In this document: positions 24,943 to 61,972 of the stretch, in pieces
Layout of the letters: the number at the start of each line of letters is the position of its first letter
Numbering within the stretch: position 1 is the first letter of the stretch
Assembly: GCF_016433145.1 (NCBI RefSeq)
Contig: NC_058133.1
Span: 405,124,911-405,188,910 of the forward strand
Reading direction: 5' to 3'
Origin: Gracilinanus agilis
Taxonomy: Eukaryota
Length of the DNA: 64,000 nt
Notes under the pieces: model-generated
The model's input: only the letters and a program-made list of their open reading frames with translations
The model's database searches: none
What the model was told of the DNA's origin: nothing
Position numbers and translations under genes: made by a program

Positions 24943-25092
24943 NNNNNNNNNNNNNNNNNNNNNNNNNNNNNNNNNNNNNNNNNNNNNNNNNNNNNNNNNN
25001 NNNNNNNNNNNNNNNNNNNNNNNNNNNNNNNNNNNNNNNNNNNNNNNNNNNNNNNNNNNNNNNNNNNNNNNNNNNNNNNNNNNNNNNNNNNN
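24943..25092. other. Assembly gap (150 N)
   Basis: Direct reading. Confidence 1.
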
Positions 25093-33348: not shown

Positions 33349-33409
33349 CTTCCGTCCAGCTTCCGTGGCAGAGGTCTGTTTCACATAACAAAGTACCATA
33401 CTACATCAA
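33349..33409 (+). CDS. UTRN: Utrophin internal coding exon (homologue of DMD exon 62), 61 bp; (T)[19 protein letters not shown](N), first half of the WW domain
   Basis: Acceptor ttttgtttcctcag|CT, donor CAA|gtaagt. Phase 1 to 2. Contains the first WW tryptophan and the YY motif. Confidence 0.97.
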
Positions 33410-34429
33410 GTAAGTTTCCTTTGGTTCTCTTTAATGGTAGTGTGAAAACTTCATGGCTTTAACTGCCAAGATTCAGTTGTACTATCTTGAAGGAAAACGA
33501 ATTTCTAAAAATGTGAAAGAAATGGGTGTAAACATCACACTGACTATTCTCCATCATTGCATCAAAAATGTTTTTTTTTTCCCGTTAATGAGTAAAATTT
33601 TATACCTTCCCCATAAAAGATATGAGTTCAAAATTCTCCTGTATGGATTATAGATCATATCTTGCTATCATGATAATATTAACTATGATAACAATTATAA
33701 TAGATAGTATCTTCAAGATTTCCAAGTGCTTTATATACATTGTTTCTTCTGCAAAATGTTTCTTCTGCAAAATGCAAAAATGTATAAATTTTAAAGTTCC
33801 TTATAAATATCAATTATTAATCTCCCTACCTATGGCGATTACATAAGCAACTCTCATCTATCCCCTCCCTTTGTCTTAGTGCCCCAGCTTCTCTCCAACA
33901 CACACAAATATATATGATTTCCAGCTAAACTCATTCTCTAGACTCTCCTCCATTGCACTCTGGCGCCACTGGACAACTCTCCTAATTTCCTTCATTTTGT
34001 CTTTGCTTAATAGAATGTAAACTCTTTTTCAGTAGAGACTGTCTTGTTTTCTTATGGTTATGTCTTCAGTGCTTAGCATAGTGCCTGGCACATATTAAGG
34101 ACTTAATAAATGTTCTGTCTCTTTTTGATAGCAAATAAGAATTTACTTTTAAGTAAATTTTAGGCAGGGATATTTTAATTAATGCTTTTATTTCTGGGAA
34201 ATTGGTTAAGCAACATTTTTTTAGGGCAGTCAGAAAAATGAACATTTCTTTGAAAATTCGGAGACAACATGATTGCACTATTTTTATTTTCACATCCACA
34301 ACTTTTTATCATGGCATATTTCAGTAGAAAAATTTTGTTCTGGAAAGGCGTGTCTTTGCCTTATCTGATGAATATGTTTCATCACTTTATTGTCTAGATT
34401 TGCCAAAGCTTCTAAAAAAGCTTTCTTCT

Positions 34430-48689: not shown

Positions 48690-51600
48690 TCCTCAAAAGG
48701 ATAGGGGCTGTCCACATCCCCATCTCCCTGTTCCTTTATATCATTGGCTTACATGGGAGGCTTCCTGGATGCTAGTGGTCCAACAGCCTGAAGGAAGGAA
48801 ATAGTCCTGGGGGAGATGTGGACAAGAGCATTCTTTTTTTTCTTGGTTTGGTATCTGAGTTCCCTCAGTCTCCATTTAAAAGTGTCTTTGGGCTTACCTT
48901 AGACTTGTTTACAACTTTGATGCTGTTTATAGTTATCTGCACATTTGTCTCATCCTCTATAATAGAATGAAGCTTCTTGAAGGTAAGACTATTTCATTCT
49001 CTGGAATAAATTATAAACTCATATACTAGGACTATGTTTTACTCATTGCTTTGTTGTGCAGATCAATCATATAACATTTAAAGCCCTTTCTTATCAAATA
49101 GCACTGCAAATATAGAGATGATGGATTTGGAGTCAGGAAGACCTGTATTCAAATGCTGCCCCACCTTAGGCATATTATTTAATATTTCATCTTCAGTTTC
49201 CTAATCTGTAAGATGGGAATAATAGGCCTTTCTTCACTGGATTGTTGTGAAAACCTTAATGCACTTTATAAAAGCTAGCTGTTACTATTCATATTTTAGC
49301 CCACTATAACCTAATGACACTTTTCAGGTTACCAATCCTTCATTCTCCAAACCCCATCCCCCAACCAAAAAACCTCTACATGCATAACTACATCTACGAC
49401 TTTGGCTTAAAATTAATGTTAATTGTTTTGTTAAAGTGAATGAGGGATAATTGCTAAAAGTATCTTAAGAGGAAATCTCCAACTGGAGTACCATGGTGAT
49501 GTTTTGTCTGCTTGCCTCAATTTATTTTCTTCTCAGTTTTCTAGTTATAAAAAAAAAAAAAAAACAAAACTACTTATTACCACCTGGCTCTAGAGTTAAA
49601 TAGGTGTGAGTTCCATACTGCTGAGTTTAACTGTTATTAGCACTTCTAAAAGGTGTTGAGGCCTGGAGAAGGTGTTTGGGCTAAAAACTGCCTCAGTATA
49701 GTCTGGCTTCTCTGGAGACTTATGGGAAGGAGGTTTTAGGTGGGACCTGAGAGTTTGGTTTTGGGTTTTATGATTTTTAAAATTTTAATTTCGTCTATTT
49801 TTTGGTAATTCCCAGAGTTGAGTGGTATCTTTAAATCATTATCTTTGGTGTTTCTTAATGTGAAAAGATGACATTTTTGGTCACCAAAACATTGTCATTC
49901 TAAAACCTCAGTCCCCCCCCCCCATTTCTTTCTAGTAACTCTAAAACTGTGGAGATCCAACAACTTATTTATGAACAAACTTTTACATTGTGCAAAGATT
50001 GCTACCCCTTGGAGTGGTCAAATGATTTAAAATTACACTCTATCTTTATCTTTCCATTGGGCTCTAACTAATTTCTTTATTTTATGTAATTATACCATTG
50101 TATAATGAAATTTGAAATGCATGGGATTCAGTGTTAGTCCTATGTGAGACCTAGCTGTGTATAAATATTAGATGATGGACTTCTTGGCTCCTTGAGGGCA
50201 GGAAGTGTGTCTTATACTTCTGAATGATCTCCCATAGCAAAGCACTCTGCCAGTGAACATGAAGTTGGTTGTCATGCACATAGCAGCTGCATGTTAGAAG
50301 TTTGTTGACATAATAGGGTTTCTCACCCCAACTCAGCTCTCACCCAGCACCTTCCTTTCTAAAATTATCTTCTATTTCTTCATATGTATCTTGTATGTAC
50401 CTATTTGTACACAGATTTTATCCAAGATAAGGATATAAATTCATTAAAGGCAAAGACCATTTTTTCTTGTTCTTTATAGCAGTGGCATTTAGCACATAGT
50501 AATAACAAACTAAATGCCTATTGATTCATTGGACATAACATAGCTTTGTCATTATCTTTTATATGTACACAAATAGGAGATGCTTTTTGTTTTAGACATT
50601 GAATATGACTATCATCAAAGAAGTTAAAAGTGGCAAGGTGTATGGAGCACCAGAAATGTTAATGAATAATATGATAATTAAAAAGTATTTGTAAACAGTT
50701 ATGTGAAAGATTGATCATGAGATAGTCAAATTACTTTTACTTAGCTAACATATGCTATTTAATTAAAAAAAAATGAATGTAAAATTCCTGTGCTTATTTA
50801 GATGTTTAGAGTGAAAAGAAACTAGGCAAGATAAAGAGAAGAATTAACCCATCACATGAAGTCCAAAGTCGGGTATTTTTCTAAGGATATTGTTGTTTTC
50901 TAATACACACAGAGATAATGTACTGAACAGGCTCCAGCTATCCTCTGTTGGAAGGACATAATAAGGTCAAGCACCATTTTACAAATCTCTCATCTCCTTC
51001 TCTAGTATATAACTTTACATTGTAAAGAATAAACATCTGTGCTTCTATGACATGCAAGTCTTACCCGAGGGACATCAATCTGCTTTTCTAAAGTCTACAT
51101 CATCTTTAAAAAATTAGCCCACTGACCTGCAAAAATCTTTTCTTCCTGTCTTTTCATATTCACTTGTTGAATGAAAGGGGGAAATCACCATTTGCTATAA
51201 AATAGGCTTCAAATGTGAAGTCGTGTCCACATAAATTCGTATAATGATTATTACAACTAATAATCAAAAACATGAAAAGAGAATATTAATTTCAGAGATA
51301 TACCCCACACATAAGTATTTGGCCCAATTTCCTTTGTAAGAATATTAAGTGTTTTCTGATAGATCTTTGAACTACATAAGGGAACAGTAAGAAAATTATT
51401 AATAGATAAAATTGGTTAAAATAATAACTACTTCTATAAAGGATTATTTTGTGCAGCTGTCATGTAAAGTTGCTTCTTAAATAAACATTATGAAATTATA
51501 GACATAAAGACATTGTTTTTTGTGCTTGACAAAGATGTGGCCTTACATTGTGTAAAAAAACTAGATTACCATGGGGAGAAGCAAATGGGCATTATGAGTG

Positions 51601-52726: not shown

Positions 52727-53280
52727 AATTGAGGATATAAATTTGTAGTGAATCTAGCTAGCCTATTTTCATTACTTTCTCCAACATGTAAAGTATATTT
52801 TAAGGGTTATTGAAGATTGGTGAAAGATAGAGTGGGAGCAGCAGAAAGATATTAAGCAAGGTAGAGAGAGTACCATTTTGAAATGCTTCATTGTAGGTCC
52901 AAGGGAGCAAAATAACCCCAAAACAGGGAAGGATCTAGGACTTGAAGGTTATCATGAAAATTAAGAACAGGATAAATAAGAATAAACAGTGAGAAAAGTT
53001 CAAATACACAAGATTATGATCATACAGTTTTTCAGTTCCCTGGAGATAATGGTACAGTTATTTTTTTTTAATTAAGTTATGTGGGCAGATGGGGAATACT
53101 CTGTGTGTCTGTGTGTGTGTGATCATCTCTACAATATTCCATCTATAGATAGAACTAAACTGACAGACACAAAGCCACTATCATAGTTAGAAGTTGCTAG
53201 AATAAATGGATGGAATTAAGACTTAAAAGGTAGAAAATAGAGATAGATGAAAATCACTCTTTAAAAAAATAGTCCTCTTA

Positions 53281-56469: not shown

Positions 56470-56737
56470 GGGTAGCTAAGTGGCACATTGGTGGCACATT
56501 GGATAGGGTACTGGACCTAGAATCAGAAAGACTCATCTTCTTGAGTTCAAATCTGGCCTCAGATACTTCCTTGCTGTGTGACCCTGGACAAGTCACTTAG
56601 CCCTTTTTGCCTCAGTCTCCTCATCTGTCAGATGAGCTGGAGAAGGAAATGGCAAACCACTCTAGTATCTTTGCCAAGGAAACACCAAATTAGGTTGTGA
56701 TGTGTCAGGTAATACTGAAAAACTACTGGACAAAAAC
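56470..56737 (+). mobile_element. MAR1-like SINE with an 11-bp tandem duplication in the head
   Basis: GTGGCACATTG twice (56480-56501), then CORE and ggagaaggaaatggcaaaccactctagtatctttgccaag tail. Confidence 0.8.
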
Positions 56738-57469
56738 TCTTTCTAGATTATAGTTACAAATCTCCCAAATGGAGCAAAATAAACCTTAATAGATAATCTG
56801 AATTCCAATTGCCAACACAATAAAGTTGCATTCTTAATTAATTTCCATGCACTTTTCTGTATAAACTCTGGAAAACTCATAGTTTAGAGGTTTGTCTAAC
56901 AATTGATTATATCTTGTTCCTATTCGTGATATTTAATTTCAGCTGGGCATACATATTAATGAATATATTCTTGATGCTGGATATTTATCAGTATCTTTCT
57001 GGAAACACTTTTTAAGCATTTCTTTCATCTGATGTTTTAATTCCAAAAAGTGTTAATGTCAATTTACCATCAACATTCATTAAGGTTCTTGTAGGGTATT
57101 CTGTGCTAGGTACAGAAGACAAAAAAAAAAAAAAAAAATTAAAAAAAAATCCAGCGACCCTTAAGGAACTCATTACAAATTTAGACCTACATGGTATACA
57201 AATTTTATGAGTGCTAACACATTTTATTATTCAACTTTTCCACCTATTCAACATATTTATGGAAATGATTTACATTCTCAATGAGGAAAGGTTTTTTTGA
57301 AAGGATCAATGAAAGGGAATAAGCAGGTTATCAAAAAAGTATTACTCCATACCTGGGTACTCTAAGATTTAAGTTAATGTCCAGTTCTTCAGGTATTATA
57401 TTTATAAGGTTTATTATCTGACAAAACAAAACCATGTGACTAAGTTTTTTTACCTGCTTGAAAAAGCCC

Positions 57470-57610
57470 GATTTGCCAAAGCCGCCAATAGGAAGGAAAA
57501 GAGAGCTAGACGTGGAACTCCACCCAATTTATATCCTGTCTATGTCAGCACGTAAGGACAGGAAGTGAGTAGGGTTCTGGGAATCATAGTTTTACTGGGG
57601 GATTATAGTT
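57470..57610 (+). promoter_or_regulatory. Promoter-like motif cluster with a candidate alternative first exon (Up71/Dp71-type); coding part 57542-57564 (MSARKDR+AA)
   Basis: CCAAT 57485-57489, four CpGs in about 90 bp, ACAGGAAGTG ETS site, and two ZNF143/SBS-like motifs (57577-57590, 57595-57609). ATG at 57542 is followed by AA|GTGAGT in phase 2, matching the phase of exon 59556. Inferred from motifs only. Confidence 0.45.
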
Positions 57611-57770
57611 TTTAGGGTAACAGATTCTAATTTCACAGTACCTGGGTATCTTCACAACTGATCATAAGGTATAGAGAATATAAGCTTCTGCCTTGTTTAT
57701 TGTTTGTTGGCTAAACCGATTCACTAGTAGAATCATTCAGTAGAGTCAAATGTCACATTCAAGGTCCTTT

Positions 57771-57970
57771 GTGGCTCAGTGGATTGAGAGCTAGACCAGA
57801 GACATGAGGTCCTGGATTCGGTCTGACCTCAGACACTTCCTAGCTCTGTGACCCCAGTAAGTCATTTACCCTCCATTGCCTAGCTCTTACTGCTTTCTGC
57901 CTTAGAACCAATATACAGTGTTGATACTAAGACAAGAGGGTAAGGATTTAAAAAATTAAAATAAAAAAAA
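57771..57970 (+). mobile_element. SINE1_Mdo-like SINE (long 3' variant), head clipped
   Basis: gtggctcagtggattgagag...gtaaggatttaaaaaattaaaataaaaaaaa. Confidence 0.8.
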
Positions 57971-58029
57971 ATGCAAAATACCTTCCAGGATTGAACTAAA
58001 GGACTAATTGCTAAGATCAAGGAAAGCTT

Positions 58030-58700
58030 AAAAATGAAGACATTTGCTTATTGAAGGTATTTGCCACTATCTTAAAGGAGGTCCTGTTCAGAATCCAAGT
58101 CAAGATGGGCCTCTAGATGATTCTGATTATGGATGGTACTGTATCCATTGCATCAAAAGCTGGGAACACTGCCTTCTCAGTGTATTATTCAAAAGAGTTT
58201 GGCCACTGAATAGAATTAAAAAGATAAAGACTCATTATTGTCCAGAGTATGATATGCAGTTGGATAGGTGATATTCATCCATCAGAACATATTTATATGA
58301 TTTAGAGTTATATTGACTTATAACTATATAATACTGCAAGCCACGAAGAATATCTAGGCTCCAAAGAATTGAGTTTGAGGATCCACCAAAGGGCAATGGC
58401 AGAGTAGTAGTATATGGTGGACATAATCAGGCAGCTACTAAAGCAAGAAATTAGACAGTATGAAGGATTGTACTGGAAAAAAAGTATGACTGGGGAAAAG
58501 AATTAACTAGTTACTTAGTGAAAGCTAGAGCTATATAATGAATAACCTATACACTTCATTGATATCCATGCACATGCCAGGAAAATGAGATTTTCTCAGC
58601 TTGGTATGTGGAGCTCTTTGGGCAAATTTATGGTAGGACATGGATAAGAGCTGCACAGGTCATCTGTCATGGGTAGCTGATAGTTTGCATTGTTGGCAGG
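58030..58700 (+). mobile_element. RTE-type LINE fragment, decayed
   Basis: Shares the ...tgaggatccaccaaagggcaatggcagag motif with the 13.4-kb fragment, plus atgcagttggata and a 3' region of RTE-like character. Confidence 0.5.
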
Positions 58701-59555
58701 AAAACCTGAATTTGATGAGAATACAGATCACTGGATCCTTGGTGTACCACATGACTTTGCTTATAGGTGAAGAATTTGTGTATCAGAAACACGAATTCAT
58801 CCTAGTATTCACATAGTAATAGTAATAAGAGATTTAAATGAGAGACAAAAGGGAGGGATCGAGGTTTGGAGTTCTGCTTAGGATAAAGAAAATATGAAAC
58901 ATTTACTTTTTATGTAAAAGCAAGGAAATAGAAAATAATTCAATAAATATAGTGCCATCAAGATTATATCTGAAGGACAGAGAAGAAATGGAAGGAAAAA
59001 GAAGCAAAATTAGGCAAAGGAGCAAAGAAAGACAAAAACACAAAGGACCTGAGATAGATACAAAGGGAAAGACATGAGCTGGGGCAGAAAAAAAGATTTA
59101 TAATATTCTGAGATAAGTAATTTAGGTCTGGTAACTGATCTGGATATTTATCACTGAAACTGAAATTCAAAGACCAAAAATTTAGGTTTTAATATCTAAT
59201 ACCTAGTTTTGGAAACTGGAATTTTCTCAAGTGGTTGAAGTAAATCCTTCCATTGTTTCTTTCAAATGAATCATCAAATTCCCAAATGCTCAACAGCAGT
59301 TAGAGCATCAGGTTTCTTCATGACACTGTGGTTTTGTCCAGTTTCTCAACACTTTATTTAATGAACTGTAAATAATTATGAAATAGCACATTGGAAATAA
59401 TAAACCATTCTTTTTGTCTTTTAAATTATGGCCATCTTGGGAGGGCTTTACTATTTGGGAACTTGATGCAAAGACATTTTGGAAATAAATTTTTCTTGCC
59501 ACATAACTTTGTTTAAACTTTTGCATATTTCTAAAAATATATCTATTTATTTCAG

Positions 59556-59617
59556 TCACCAAACACAGACAACATGTTGGGATCATCCTAAAATGACAGA
59601 ACTCTTTCAGTCCCTTG
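59556..59617 (+). CDS. UTRN: Utrophin internal coding exon (homologue of DMD exon 63), 62 bp; (N)[20 protein letters not shown], second half of the WW domain
   Basis: Acceptor tatttatttcag|T, donor TTG|gtgagt. AA+T gives Asn with the previous exon, and the 62 bp length equals DMD exon 63. Confidence 0.97.
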
Positions 59618-59751
59618 GTGAGTATGATTTTATTGAATAGTAGTTACTCAAGGAATTTTATTAAACTACTGAGCTCTGTGTTCTCTTCATTGGGTGAAAT
59701 TCTTTGCCAGCATATCAGATATCATGTGGTATGGTGAAAAGTCACCTACTT

Positions 59752-59960
59752 AGGGCAGCTAGTTTGCTCAGTTGATAAATAATGGTCCTGTAGACTGAAG
59801 ATCCTAAATTCAAATGTGACCTCAGACATTTCCTAGCTGTGTGACCCTGGGCAAGTCACTTAGCCCCCATTGCCCAGCCTATACCACTTTTTCCACCTTA
59901 GAACTAATGTTTAGTATTGATTCTAAGATGGAAGGTAAGAGTTTTTTTTTAAAGAAAATA
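59752..59960 (+). mobile_element. SINE1_Mdo-like SINE (long 3' variant)
   Basis: Head and CORE present, imperfect flanking repeat aaaag(t/g)cacct. Lies about 135 bp downstream of the last exon. Confidence 0.85.
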
Positions 59961-61255
59961 AAAAGGCACCTGCTCTGCTTTATCCACAAAGAATTCAATG
60001 TCAGGAAATAGATAGAAGCTATGAATTTATCGTGTGTTCATTTCTAAGAACAATGTAATATCAAAAGAATTTCTACTATATCGGCTTAACCTCTCTTCTG
60101 AGTGTTAATCATAGCTTGCATTTGAGTGAGTCTAAAAGAAATTTCAAGACACCAGTAGCCCTCAGTTTCCTTTCTACAAGAATTTACTTCTGTTAATCTG
60201 ATTGCTATACAGGGCAGTTTCTTCTATTCTATTGAGCCTACCTATGTTAAGCATAAAAGATTTTTATTCTATATACCCTTACTTTTATTTTTAACTAAGG
60301 TCTACCAGGAAGAATGCTAGCTTTGGAGCCAAGAAAGATCTGGATTCAAATTCTTGTTATTCTTTGTGCAACCTTGGGCATGATGTTCTCTCCTCATGAG
60401 AAAATATGAAATAATACTAGTTGCATACTCTACTTCAGAAGATTGTTGTGAAGATATCATAATCATACCTTCCATTTATAGAACACTTTAAGGTTTATGA
60501 AACATCCATGTCCTCTTTGCATCTCAAGCCCCATCCAGTCCTTGTGGGCAGGAACTCTATATAAGATAGTGCCTCTCACATAACAGGTGCTTAATAAATA
60601 TTATTTGACTTCACTTAACCCTATTAGGTATGTAGTAGAAAGATAAATATTTCCATTTTACAGGTGAGAAAACTAAGACTCAAAAAGATTAAGTAACTTG
60701 CTCAATTGACATACAACGATTAAGTACCAGAAAAAAGATTCTATCTCTGCATATTCTGGCACTATTTCTACTTTACTAATGCTACATCAGCTATGCATAA
60801 AAGTATAATTAAGGGTAAAAGTTAAAGGTATGCTCCATAAAAGGTTGGCCTTTGAGATAATTTAGGCATGGCTGTTATGACTCTCAAACTCTAGATAGAT
60901 GTCATTTCTTATTATTCCATACTATTCATTCATTCATTAAATAAAAATGCATTTCTTTGAAAATTCCCTGAGAAAATTCAGAAGATGAGTTCTGCTCCCA
61001 AATGACTTTTGATAATAAAATGTGACCTTGTATTTAGATAGCTAAAAAGATAGTCAATAACCTTGAGTGCTTACTATGGACCAAGCACTGTATTAAATGC
61101 TGAGAATACAAAGAAAGTTTTAAAAAACAGTCTTCTTGCATTCAAGGAGCTTAAAAGTCTAATGGGAGAGACAACATGTATAGGGATGTACAAGATATAT
61201 AGAGAAAATGCCTCCCTGTCCTGAAAGAATCTTATCTTCAGTTGATTATCATCCT

Positions 61256-61257
61256 CT

Positions 61258-61289
<32 letters not shown>

Positions 61290-61302
61290 TCTCTCTTTCT
61301 CT
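61256..61302 (+). repeat. (TC)n microsatellite
   Basis: Direct reading. Confidence 0.9.
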
Positions 61303-61676
61303 TCCTATTTCTTCTGCTCTTTATTGCTGAACTCCAATTGTACCATTCCACTGAAGCTGCTTTCTCCAAAGTTTTTAATGTTCTCTTAATTGCAATTCTT
61401 CATTCTCCCTGACATCTTTGCAGCCTTTGACATTGTTGATTGCTCTCTCTTCAATTTTTAAAACTTGCTTTCTAGCAAACAACTCTCTCCTGCTTCTCTT
61501 ACTACCTATCAGATTGTAACTTCTTAGTTTTCCTTGCTAGATGGTCATCCAGATCCTTCTAACTGTACTGCCCCAAAAGGATCTAATTTGGGCCTTCTTC
61601 TCTTTTCCCTCTATATTGCTTCATCTAATGATCTCATCAGTTCCCATGGATTTAATTGCCATCTCTGTGCTAAGGA

Positions 61677-61862: not shown

Positions 61863-61893
<31 letters not shown>

Positions 61894-61972
61894 CAAAACA
61901 AAACAAAAAAACACCTGAATGGAGTCATGAAGAATGAAGAGTTAGACAACTAAAAAAAATTGAACAACAAAA
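61677..61972 (+). mobile_element. MAR1-like SINE inserted in L2, itself containing (CAAAA)n
   Basis: Head, CORE and tail split by (CAAAA)n at about 61864-61909. Confidence 0.75.
61864..61909 (+). repeat. (CAAAA)n pentanucleotide repeat
   Basis: Direct reading. Confidence 0.95.

What the first reader, a model, noticed from the sequence alone, without database searches (positions are those of the whole stretch)
57470..57610. Candidate Up71/Dp71-type alternative promoter and first exon in the 26-kb intron that splits the WW domain
Seen: ATG at 57542, then TCA GCA CGT AAG GAC AGG AA|GTGAGT. This is a 6/6 intronic donor consensus in phase 2, the phase needed by exon 59556 (T CAC CAA...). It would give [20 protein letters not shown]. 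The ATG is the first in frame after a TGA at 57437. Around it are CCAAT (57485), four CpGs within about 90 bp of otherwise CpG-poor DNA, an ETS/GABPA-type ACAGGAAGTG overlapping the donor, and two tandem ZNF143/SBS-like motifs (minus-strand ACTATGATTCCCAG and ACTATAATCCCCCAG). Known: dystrophin Dp71 starts in intron 62 with a short phase-2 first exon (MREQLKG) joined to exon 63, and a utrophin counterpart, Up71, has been reported. Inference: this is the marsupial short-isoform first exon, giving a product with a half WW domain. Weak points: poor Kozak context (T at -3 and +4) and a competing phase-1 donor C|GTAAGG at 57552.
Basis: partly seen in the sequence, partly recalled or inferred. Interest (0 to 1): 0.72.

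Follow-up and report, generated by a model that had tools for sequence, protein, structure and literature searches.

The report
Unproven candidate short-utrophin first exon
A start codon and a splice signal inside an opossum utrophin intron could in principle start a short utrophin like the known Up71, but such pairs arise by chance about four times in this intron, and I could obtain no expression or conservation evidence.

Summary
Every letter-level claim checks out. There is an ATG at 57542 and a GTGAGT donor at 57565. The phase fits the utrophin exon at 59556-59617, which encodes the second half of the WW domain.

Taken one by one, none of these features exceeds chance:
- The plus strand of the intron has 7 GTRAGT sites, and 4 of them carry a phase-2 ATG reading frame.
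- The ZNF143-like motif scores 1 hit against 0.61 expected.
- There is no CpG island.

The one suggestive point is that this spot is the densest CpG spot in the whole 64 kb (rough p 0.02-0.04 for the coincidence).

The peptide MSARKDRN does not resemble the N-termini of short-utrophin gene models from tortoise, bear or elephant shark. Those models resemble each other and Dp71.

No other marsupial DNA was reachable.

I put chance at about 0.45, a true Up71-like first exon at about 0.3, and another regulatory or antisense element at about 0.15. Even if true, it would be a lineage version of a known isoform, so interest is low.

The parts
33349..33409 (+). Utrophin exon equivalent to exon 62 (first half of the WW domain, ends ...VPYYI plus AA), with donor GTAAGT at 33410
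57437..57439 (+). In-frame TGA upstream of the candidate ATG
57469..57552 (.). Four CpGs in 84 bp. This is the only place in the 64-kb window with 4 CpG per 100 bp. Local observed/expected CpG is 0.49 against 0.10 for the window, and GC is only 40%, so it is not a CpG island.
57485..57489 (+). CCAAT pentamer (149 such in the window, both strands)
57542..57564 (+). Candidate coding part of a first exon: ATG plus 6 codons plus AA (MSARKDR, with the split codon giving N). Kozak context is weak (T at -3, T at +4).
57552..57557 (+). Competing donor CAC|GTAAGG. It is in phase 1, so it would be out of frame with exon 63.
   Evidence: matrix score about 3.2 computed by hand, against 4.1 for the candidate donor
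57565..57570 (+). Candidate donor GAA|GTGAGT in phase 2. Consensus-matrix score is 4.1 bits. The donor of the neighbouring real exon 62 scores 5.3.
57558..57567 (+). ETS-like ACAGGAAGTG overlapping the donor
57577..57609 (-). Two adjacent ZNF143/SBS-like motifs, which look like a local tandem duplication of a unit of about 19 nt. Only the first matches the 14-mer within 2 mismatches.
57527..57533 (-). TATAAAT on the minus strand, downstream of the SBS-like and ETS-like motifs when read on that strand
57452..57456 (-). Minus-strand CAG|GT (donor-like CAG|GTAAAA), about 45 nt beyond the start site that the minus-strand TATA box would imply
59556..59617 (+). Utrophin exon equivalent to exon 63 (62 nt; [20 protein letters not shown], the second half of the WW domain). 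It contains the in-frame internal ATG of KMTELF, which has A at -3.

Best explanation
Most likely this is ordinary intronic DNA in which a start codon and a consensus donor happen to fall in the phase that the next utrophin exon needs. It would then be a cryptic, unused (or at most rarely used) pseudo-exon rather than the marsupial Up71 first exon. The surrounding motifs would be post-hoc matches of the kind found in any 140-bp stretch. The CpG cluster would be a local fluctuation in very CpG-poor DNA. Shown: the sequence features and their chance rates. Inferred: lack of function.
For: - The intron's plus strand has 14 donors at least as good as this one, 4 of them with a phase-2 ATG reading frame. 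Of 7 GTRAGT sites, 4 have one.
- The donor has A at -1, and a second donor 13 nt upstream is out of frame.
- Kozak context is weak.
- There is no CpG island: GC is 40% and there are only 4 CpGs.
- A 4-CpG cluster appears somewhere in 40% of random placements.
- The SBS-like motif gives 1 hit against 0.61 expected.
- MSARKDRN is no closer to the short-utrophin N-termini of tortoise (MSFHVKGGIH), bear (FSAHVKGLL, KNKHHRKN) or elephant shark (MRQEITG) than background intron is. Those models resemble each other and Dp71. On a frame-free comparison with back-translated patterns, the candidate ranks 39th to 194th of 653 blocks.
- No marsupial model with this N-terminus appeared among the returned hits, although Sarcophilus has G-utrophin-type models.
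Against: - The densest CpG spot in the whole 64-kb window lies exactly on this candidate. The rough chance that it falls within 100 bp of any of the 4 candidates is 0.02-0.04.
- The stretch 57300-57760 is unique in the window and is not a copy of an abundant repeat.
- Short utrophin models that start in this same intron exist from shark to bear, so a first exon somewhere in this intron is expected. No better candidate was found.
- The absence of RNA evidence reflects a test that failed to run, not a negative result.
Confidence: 0.45

Rival explanations
1. A weak internal promoter that is not a CpG island lies at about 57470-57540. It drives a first exon that ends at 57564 and splices to exon 63, giving an Up71-like utrophin that lacks the first half of the WW domain. 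Translation would start either at the weak ATG at 57542 (unique peptide MSARKDRN) or, by leaky scanning, at the better internal ATG of KMTELF in exon 63.
For: - Right intron, right strand and right phase, 1,991 bp upstream of exon 63.
- The intron side of the donor is 6/6 consensus.
- It coincides with the CpG maximum of the window.
- The DNA is unique in the window.
- Short utrophin models that join exon 63 directly exist in tortoise, bear and elephant shark. Up71 is reported for human and mouse (Wilson et al. 1999, as cited in PMC1790709 and PMC8518368).
- The N-terminus MSA resembles MSF (tortoise) and FSA (bear), but that is only three residues.
Against: - The coding signature arises about 4 times per intron by chance.
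- There is no significant similarity to the conserved S-[AF]-H-V-K-G peptide shared by tortoise and bear.
- Weak Kozak context, A at -1 of the donor, and a competing out-of-frame donor.
- No CpG island.
- No RNA or cross-species support obtained.
Confidence: 0.3
2. The spot is a functional, germline-hypomethylated regulatory element, but not a coding first exon of utrophin. It could be an intronic enhancer, or a promoter that fires on the minus strand or in both directions. Read on the minus strand, the order is two SBS-like motifs, an ETS core, TATAAAT (57533-57527), an implied start near 57500, and a donor-like CAG|GT at 57453.
For: - The minus-strand order of the motifs is the classical upstream-to-downstream promoter layout.
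- It is the CpG maximum of the window.
- The DNA is unique in the window.
Against: - All of this is motif spotting at chance-level counts.
- AATAAA lies only about 85 nt beyond the implied minus-strand start, so any such transcript would be short.
- No expression data.
Confidence: 0.15
3. The motif and CpG cluster is a relic of an old inserted element, for example an LTR-like promoter fragment, which would explain TATA, CCAAT and CpGs lying together without any present function.
For: - A 10-nt direct repeat, TACCTGGGTA, flanks 57360-57638 (family D4).
- Repeats border the stretch: an A-run at 57121-57149 and a SINE from about 57760.
Against: - A 10-nt repeat at that spacing is expected about once by chance in 2 kb.
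- There are no terminal TG..CA ends, no poly(A) tail, and no second copy in the window.
- No repeat library was available.
Confidence: 0.05

Closest known systems
Dystrophin Dp71 first exon (intron 62 of DMD; unique peptide MREQLKG joined to exon 63)
   Same: Same intron position between the two WW-coding exons, same phase-2 join to the 62-nt exon, and a unique peptide of 7-8 residues (PMC1790709; Dp71-type models P0207, P0217 and P0069).
   Different: By my own knowledge, Dp71 has a housekeeping-type, GC-rich promoter, and its peptide is conserved from mammals to cartilaginous fish (PMC1790709). Here there is no CpG island and no similarity to M-R-E-Q-[LV]-K-G.
Utrophin Up71 (Wilson et al. 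1999, Hum Mol Genet 8:1271; the paper is not held, so it is known here only from citations in PMC1790709 and PMC8518368)
   Same: A short utrophin from an internal promoter, the counterpart of Dp71. From memory, its first exon lies in intron 62.
   Different: I could not read the published first-exon sequence or its position, so orthology is untested. Opossum expression is unknown.
Predicted short utrophin models that join exon 63 directly: Gopherus agassizii P0191/P0277 (MSFHVKGGIH), Ursus maritimus P0153 (FSAHVKGLL, no start codon) and P0150 (KNKHHRKN), Callorhinchus milii P0163/P0298 (MRQEITG)
   Same: Same join to [12 protein letters not shown] and the same kind of short unique N-terminus. 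The first three residues, MSA, resemble MSF and FSA.
   Different: Tortoise and bear share S-x-H-V-K-G, and the shark model resembles Dp71. The opossum candidate has RKDRN there and scores at background level.
G-utrophin / Up113 (internal promoter in intron 55)
   Same: Another internal-promoter utrophin isoform. Marsupial models of this type exist (Sarcophilus X6 and X7, 957 and 944 aa).
   Different: It uses a different intron, keeps the whole WW domain, and its first exon is strongly conserved across vertebrates (PMC1790709). It is not in this window.

Membership tests
Dp71/Up71-type short-isoform first exon | Lies in the intron between the two WW-coding exons, upstream of exon 63, on the gene's strand | tested here: met
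   Exon 62 equivalent at 33349-33409, exon 63 equivalent at 59556-59617, candidate at 57542-57564 on the + strand
Dp71/Up71-type short-isoform first exon | The donor phase keeps the reading frame into exon 63, with an in-frame ATG and no intervening stop | tested here: met
   Phase 2, AA+T gives Asn, upstream stop at 57437. However, 4 such sites occur in this intron by chance.
Dp71/Up71-type short-isoform first exon | Actually spliced to exon 63 in RNA | not testable with these tools
No holder on record as RNA.
Dp71/Up71-type short-isoform first exon | Transcription starts just upstream (promoter activity) | not testable with these tools
   No CAGE, 5' RACE or chromatin data are available here
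Dp71/Up71-type short-isoform first exon | The first-exon peptide or DNA is orthologous to those of other vertebrates (M-[RS]-x-x-[LIV]-[KT]-G; S-[AF]-H-V-K-G in tortoise and bear) | tested here: not met
   BLOSUM scan and frame-free scan with back-translated patterns. The candidate ranks 39th to 194th of 653 blocks, and only MSA is shared.
Dp71/Up71-type short-isoform first exon | Conserved ATG and donor in other marsupials | not testable with these tools
   No marsupial genomic DNA for this intron could be fetched. Logan contigs L001-L004 come from distant, unnamed species and align only at the exon.
CpG-island (housekeeping-type) promoter as described for Dp71 | High GC and a CpG observed/expected ratio above about 0.6 over 200 bp or more | tested here: not met
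   GC 0.40 and CpG observed/expected 0.49 over 200 bp with only 4 CpGs
ZNF143 binding site (SBS) | Match to the ACTACAATTCCCAG core beyond chance | tested here: inconclusive
   1 match at up to 2 mismatches against 0.61 expected; 45 of 100 shuffles reach 1 match. The 3' half of the full motif is not matched (read by eye).

The most novel reading that the evidence does not exclude
Marsupials, or at least opossums, have replaced the ancestral Up71 first exon. The opossum intron shows no recognisable copy of the S-[AF]-H-V-K-G exon shared by tortoise and bear. Instead a new, weak promoter that is not a CpG island, 2 kb upstream of exon 63, supplies a lineage-specific first exon (MSARKDRN). This would be a case of first-exon turnover in an otherwise ancient internal-promoter isoform.
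Probability: 0.25. Interest if true: 0.35.

Novelty: not a real feature. Interest (0 to 1): 0.2.

Why it matters
If real, it would extend the Up71 isoform to marsupials. It would also show that the first exon of this isoform can turn over while its join to exon 63 stays fixed. That is of modest interest for the evolution of the dystrophin/utrophin internal promoters. It would not open a new kind of biology, because Dp71, Up71 and their half-WW products are known. If it is chance, it is a useful reminder that in-phase ATG-plus-donor pairs occur several times in a 26-kb intron.

Tried and rejected
I chose too wide a stretch, and that cost the decisive test.

2. Protein route to marsupial short isoforms.
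- The representative search with the exon-63 reading frame and three word searches gave tortoise, bear and shark models but no marsupial one.
- Members hidden in clusters whose representative falls outside the length window cannot be excluded.

3. Genomic comparison.
- Contigs L001-L004, fetched through reading frames spanning exon 63, align to the window only at the exon (80-90%).
- They show no Up71-like peptide in the 1.3-4.8 kb they hold upstream of the exon.
- The bear model P0153 and two window reading frames are not on record.

4. Other sites in the intron.
- MRIQITG at 58715 is the best match to the shark and Dp71 peptides, but its nearest donor at 58767 is in phase 1.
- CSCHVKLLL at 51452 and FLQHVKYIL at 52776 match the bear peptide at chance-level scores and have no donor.

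5. LTR or other inserted-element reading: no terminal structure and no second copy.

6. Rfam scan of 56700-60200: nothing.

7. Literature: no held paper gives the Up71 first-exon sequence or position, and Wilson 1999 is not held.

The exons were handled separately, by reference.

Full report
**What is there.**
The window carries two utrophin exons on the + strand.
- The first is 33349-33409. It is 61 nt, encodes ...[16 protein letters not shown], and ends with AA before a GTAAGT donor.
- The second is 59556-59617. It is 62 nt, begins with a T that completes a codon, and then encodes [20 protein letters not shown].
- The second exon matches the WW region of solved dystrophin structures (1eg3, E 1e-10). 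It carries the utrophin-type residues seen in utrophin models of many vertebrates.
I did not test that.

**The observation.**
- ATG at 57542, six codons, then AA|GTGAGT with GT at 57565, in phase 2 as exon 63 needs.
- In-frame TGA at 57437.
- CCAAT at 57485.
- CpGs at 57469, 57483, 57511 and 57551.
- ACAGGAAGTG across the donor.
- Two minus-strand ZNF143-like motifs at 57577-57590 and 57595-57609.
- A competing phase-1 donor at 57552.
- T at -3 and +4 of the ATG.

**Is it more than chance?**
- On a simple donor consensus matrix (frequencies from my own knowledge of the classical consensus), 14 plus-strand sites in the intron score at least as well as this donor. Four of them have an ATG-initiated, stop-free phase-2 reading frame.
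- Restricting to the 6/6 consensus GTRAGT gives 7 sites, again 4 with such a frame: 36749, 47476, 52638 and 57565. The coding signature is therefore what this intron gives by chance about four times.
- The 14-mer ZNF143 core at up to 2 mismatches occurs once in the window, against 0.61 expected.
- CCAAT occurs 149 times and CAGGAAGT 5 times.
- GC here is 40% and CpG observed/expected is 0.49, so there is no CpG island.
- A cluster of 4 CpG in 100 bp arises somewhere in 40% of random placements of the window's 184 CpGs.

One thing is not trivial. This is the only such cluster, so it is the CpG maximum of the whole 64 kb, and it sits on one of the four candidates. By my rough estimate, the chance that the maximum falls within 100 bp of any of the four is 0.02-0.04. 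The stretch 57300-57760 has no second copy in the window. An abundant SINE family (13 heads in the window) starts only at about 57760.

**Expression.**
- The look-up of sequencing runs found no holder on record as RNA. Twelve runs of unknown type, from three other organism labels, hold 5-8% of the words. I suspect the SINE accounts for these, but could not check.
This is a failed test, not a negative result.
Local scripts that counted short motifs over the whole window file passed over them.

**Comparison with other species.**
Searching the exon-63 reading frame against the representative library, followed by three word searches, gave short utrophin models whose N-terminus joins exon 63 directly:
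- Gopherus agassizii: MSFHVKGGIH.
- Ursus maritimus: FSAHVKGLL (a model without a start codon) and KNKHHRKN.
- Callorhinchus milii: MRQEITG.
- Several fish models.

Dp71-type models read MREQVKG, MREQPEG and MKEQLGG.

From these models:
- Tortoise and bear share S-x-H-V-K-G, and the shark peptide resembles Dp71. A first exon in this intron therefore looks old and, in those lineages, conserved.
- The opossum candidate MSARKDRN shares only MSA.
- In a BLOSUM scan of all stop-free peptides of the intron, and in a frame-free alignment to back-translated patterns, the candidate is at background level: 155th, 39th and 194th of 653 blocks for bear, tortoise and shark. It ranks 2565th of 16,183 for the second bear peptide.
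- No other site in the intron stands out either. The best hit, MRIQITG at 58715, has its nearest donor in phase 1.
- No marsupial model with a short N-terminus appeared, although Sarcophilus has G-utrophin-type models. Members hidden in clusters with long representatives cannot be excluded.
- Four Logan genomic contigs from unnamed, distant species align to the window only at the exon. They carry no Up71-like peptide in the 1.3-4.8 kb they hold upstream of the exon. I have no reason to take them for human and did not pursue them.
- Two entries named Homo sapiens appeared in a cluster list and were not used.

**Other readings of the motif cluster.**
Read on the minus strand, the order is two SBS-like motifs, an ETS core, ACGTG, TATAAAT (57533-57527), an implied start near 57500, and a donor-like CAG|GT at 57453. 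AATAAA follows about 85 nt after that start. This layout is at least as promoter-like as the plus-strand reading, so an antisense or bidirectional element is a fair rival. An LTR-like relic was considered and has little support.

**How it would work if real.**
- Transcription would start within the CpG cluster.
- The exon would end at 57564, or out of frame at 57551, and join exon 63.
- The weak ATG would give MSARKDRN followed by the second half of the WW domain and the EF-hand and ZZ regions.
- Alternatively, scanning ribosomes would pass to the better internal ATG of KMTELF. An elephant-shark utrophin entry, V9KGX7, starts there.
- Either way the product would be a Dp71-like, half-WW utrophin.

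All of this is inference.

**Verdict.**

| Reading | Probability |
|---|---|
| Chance | about 0.45 |
| True Up71-like first exon | about 0.30 |
| Other regulatory or antisense element | about 0.15 |
| Repeat relic | about 0.05 |

Even if true, it is a lineage version of a known isoform, so interest is low (0.2).

Noticed in passing
window 58715-58768: ATG-initiated reading frame MRIQITGSLVYHMTLLI. Its first seven residues are the best match in the intron to the elephant-shark short-utrophin N-terminus (MRQEITG) and to Dp71-type MREQVKG. The nearest donor (TAG|GTGAAG at 58767) is in phase 1, so it cannot join exon 63 in frame. Probably chance.
   Followed up: partly
window 51452-51478 and 52776-52802: Peptides CSCHVKLLL and FLQHVKYIL are the best matches to the bear short-utrophin N-terminus FSAHVKGLL (both contain HVK). 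Scores are at the chance level of the scan, and no GT donor follows either one.
   Followed up: partly
window 57452-57612, minus strand: Read on the minus strand, the motifs are in classical promoter order: two SBS-like motifs, ETS core, ACGTG, TATAAAT, implied start near 57500, donor-like CAG|GT at 57453, and AATAAA at about 57415. This is a possible antisense or bidirectional start.
   Followed up: partly
window 57571-57610: The two ZNF143-like motifs look like a local tandem duplication of a unit of about 19 nt (about 75% alike by eye). It is too short for Tandem Repeats Finder at score 30.
   Followed up: partly
window 57760-57900 and 12 other places (e.g. 5332, 25393, 34444, 53294, 62979): A tRNA-like SINE head (GGCTCAGTGGATTGAGAGC) is present 13 times in the window against 0 expected. 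One copy starts about 200 bp downstream of the candidate donor, and it may explain the small word shares in runs of other organisms.
   Followed up: partly
window 58300-59100: Purine-rich stretch on the + strand (GC skew up to +0.43, AT skew up to +0.48), with a degenerate GAAGGAAAAA array at 58972-59009, just upstream of exon 63.
   Followed up: no
window 61254-61312 and 61865-61908: Microsatellites: (CT)25 and a perfect (AAAAC)8.8.
   Followed up: no
window 24637 and 24943-25092: Assembly gaps or masked letters (1 N and 150 N). They lie outside the intron in question and were left untouched.
   Followed up: no
No letters from them were sent to any search tool afterwards.
   Followed up: no
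proteins P0191/P0277, P0153, P0163/P0298 (other species): Short utrophin N-termini of tortoise (MSFHVKGGIH), bear (FSAHVKGLL) and elephant shark (MRQEITG) line up with Dp71 (MREQLKG) as M-[RS]-x-x-[LIV]-[KT]-G. This suggests that the Up71 and Dp71 first exons descend from one ancestral exon, with the donor moved 6-9 nt downstream in the tortoise and bear models.
   Followed up: partly
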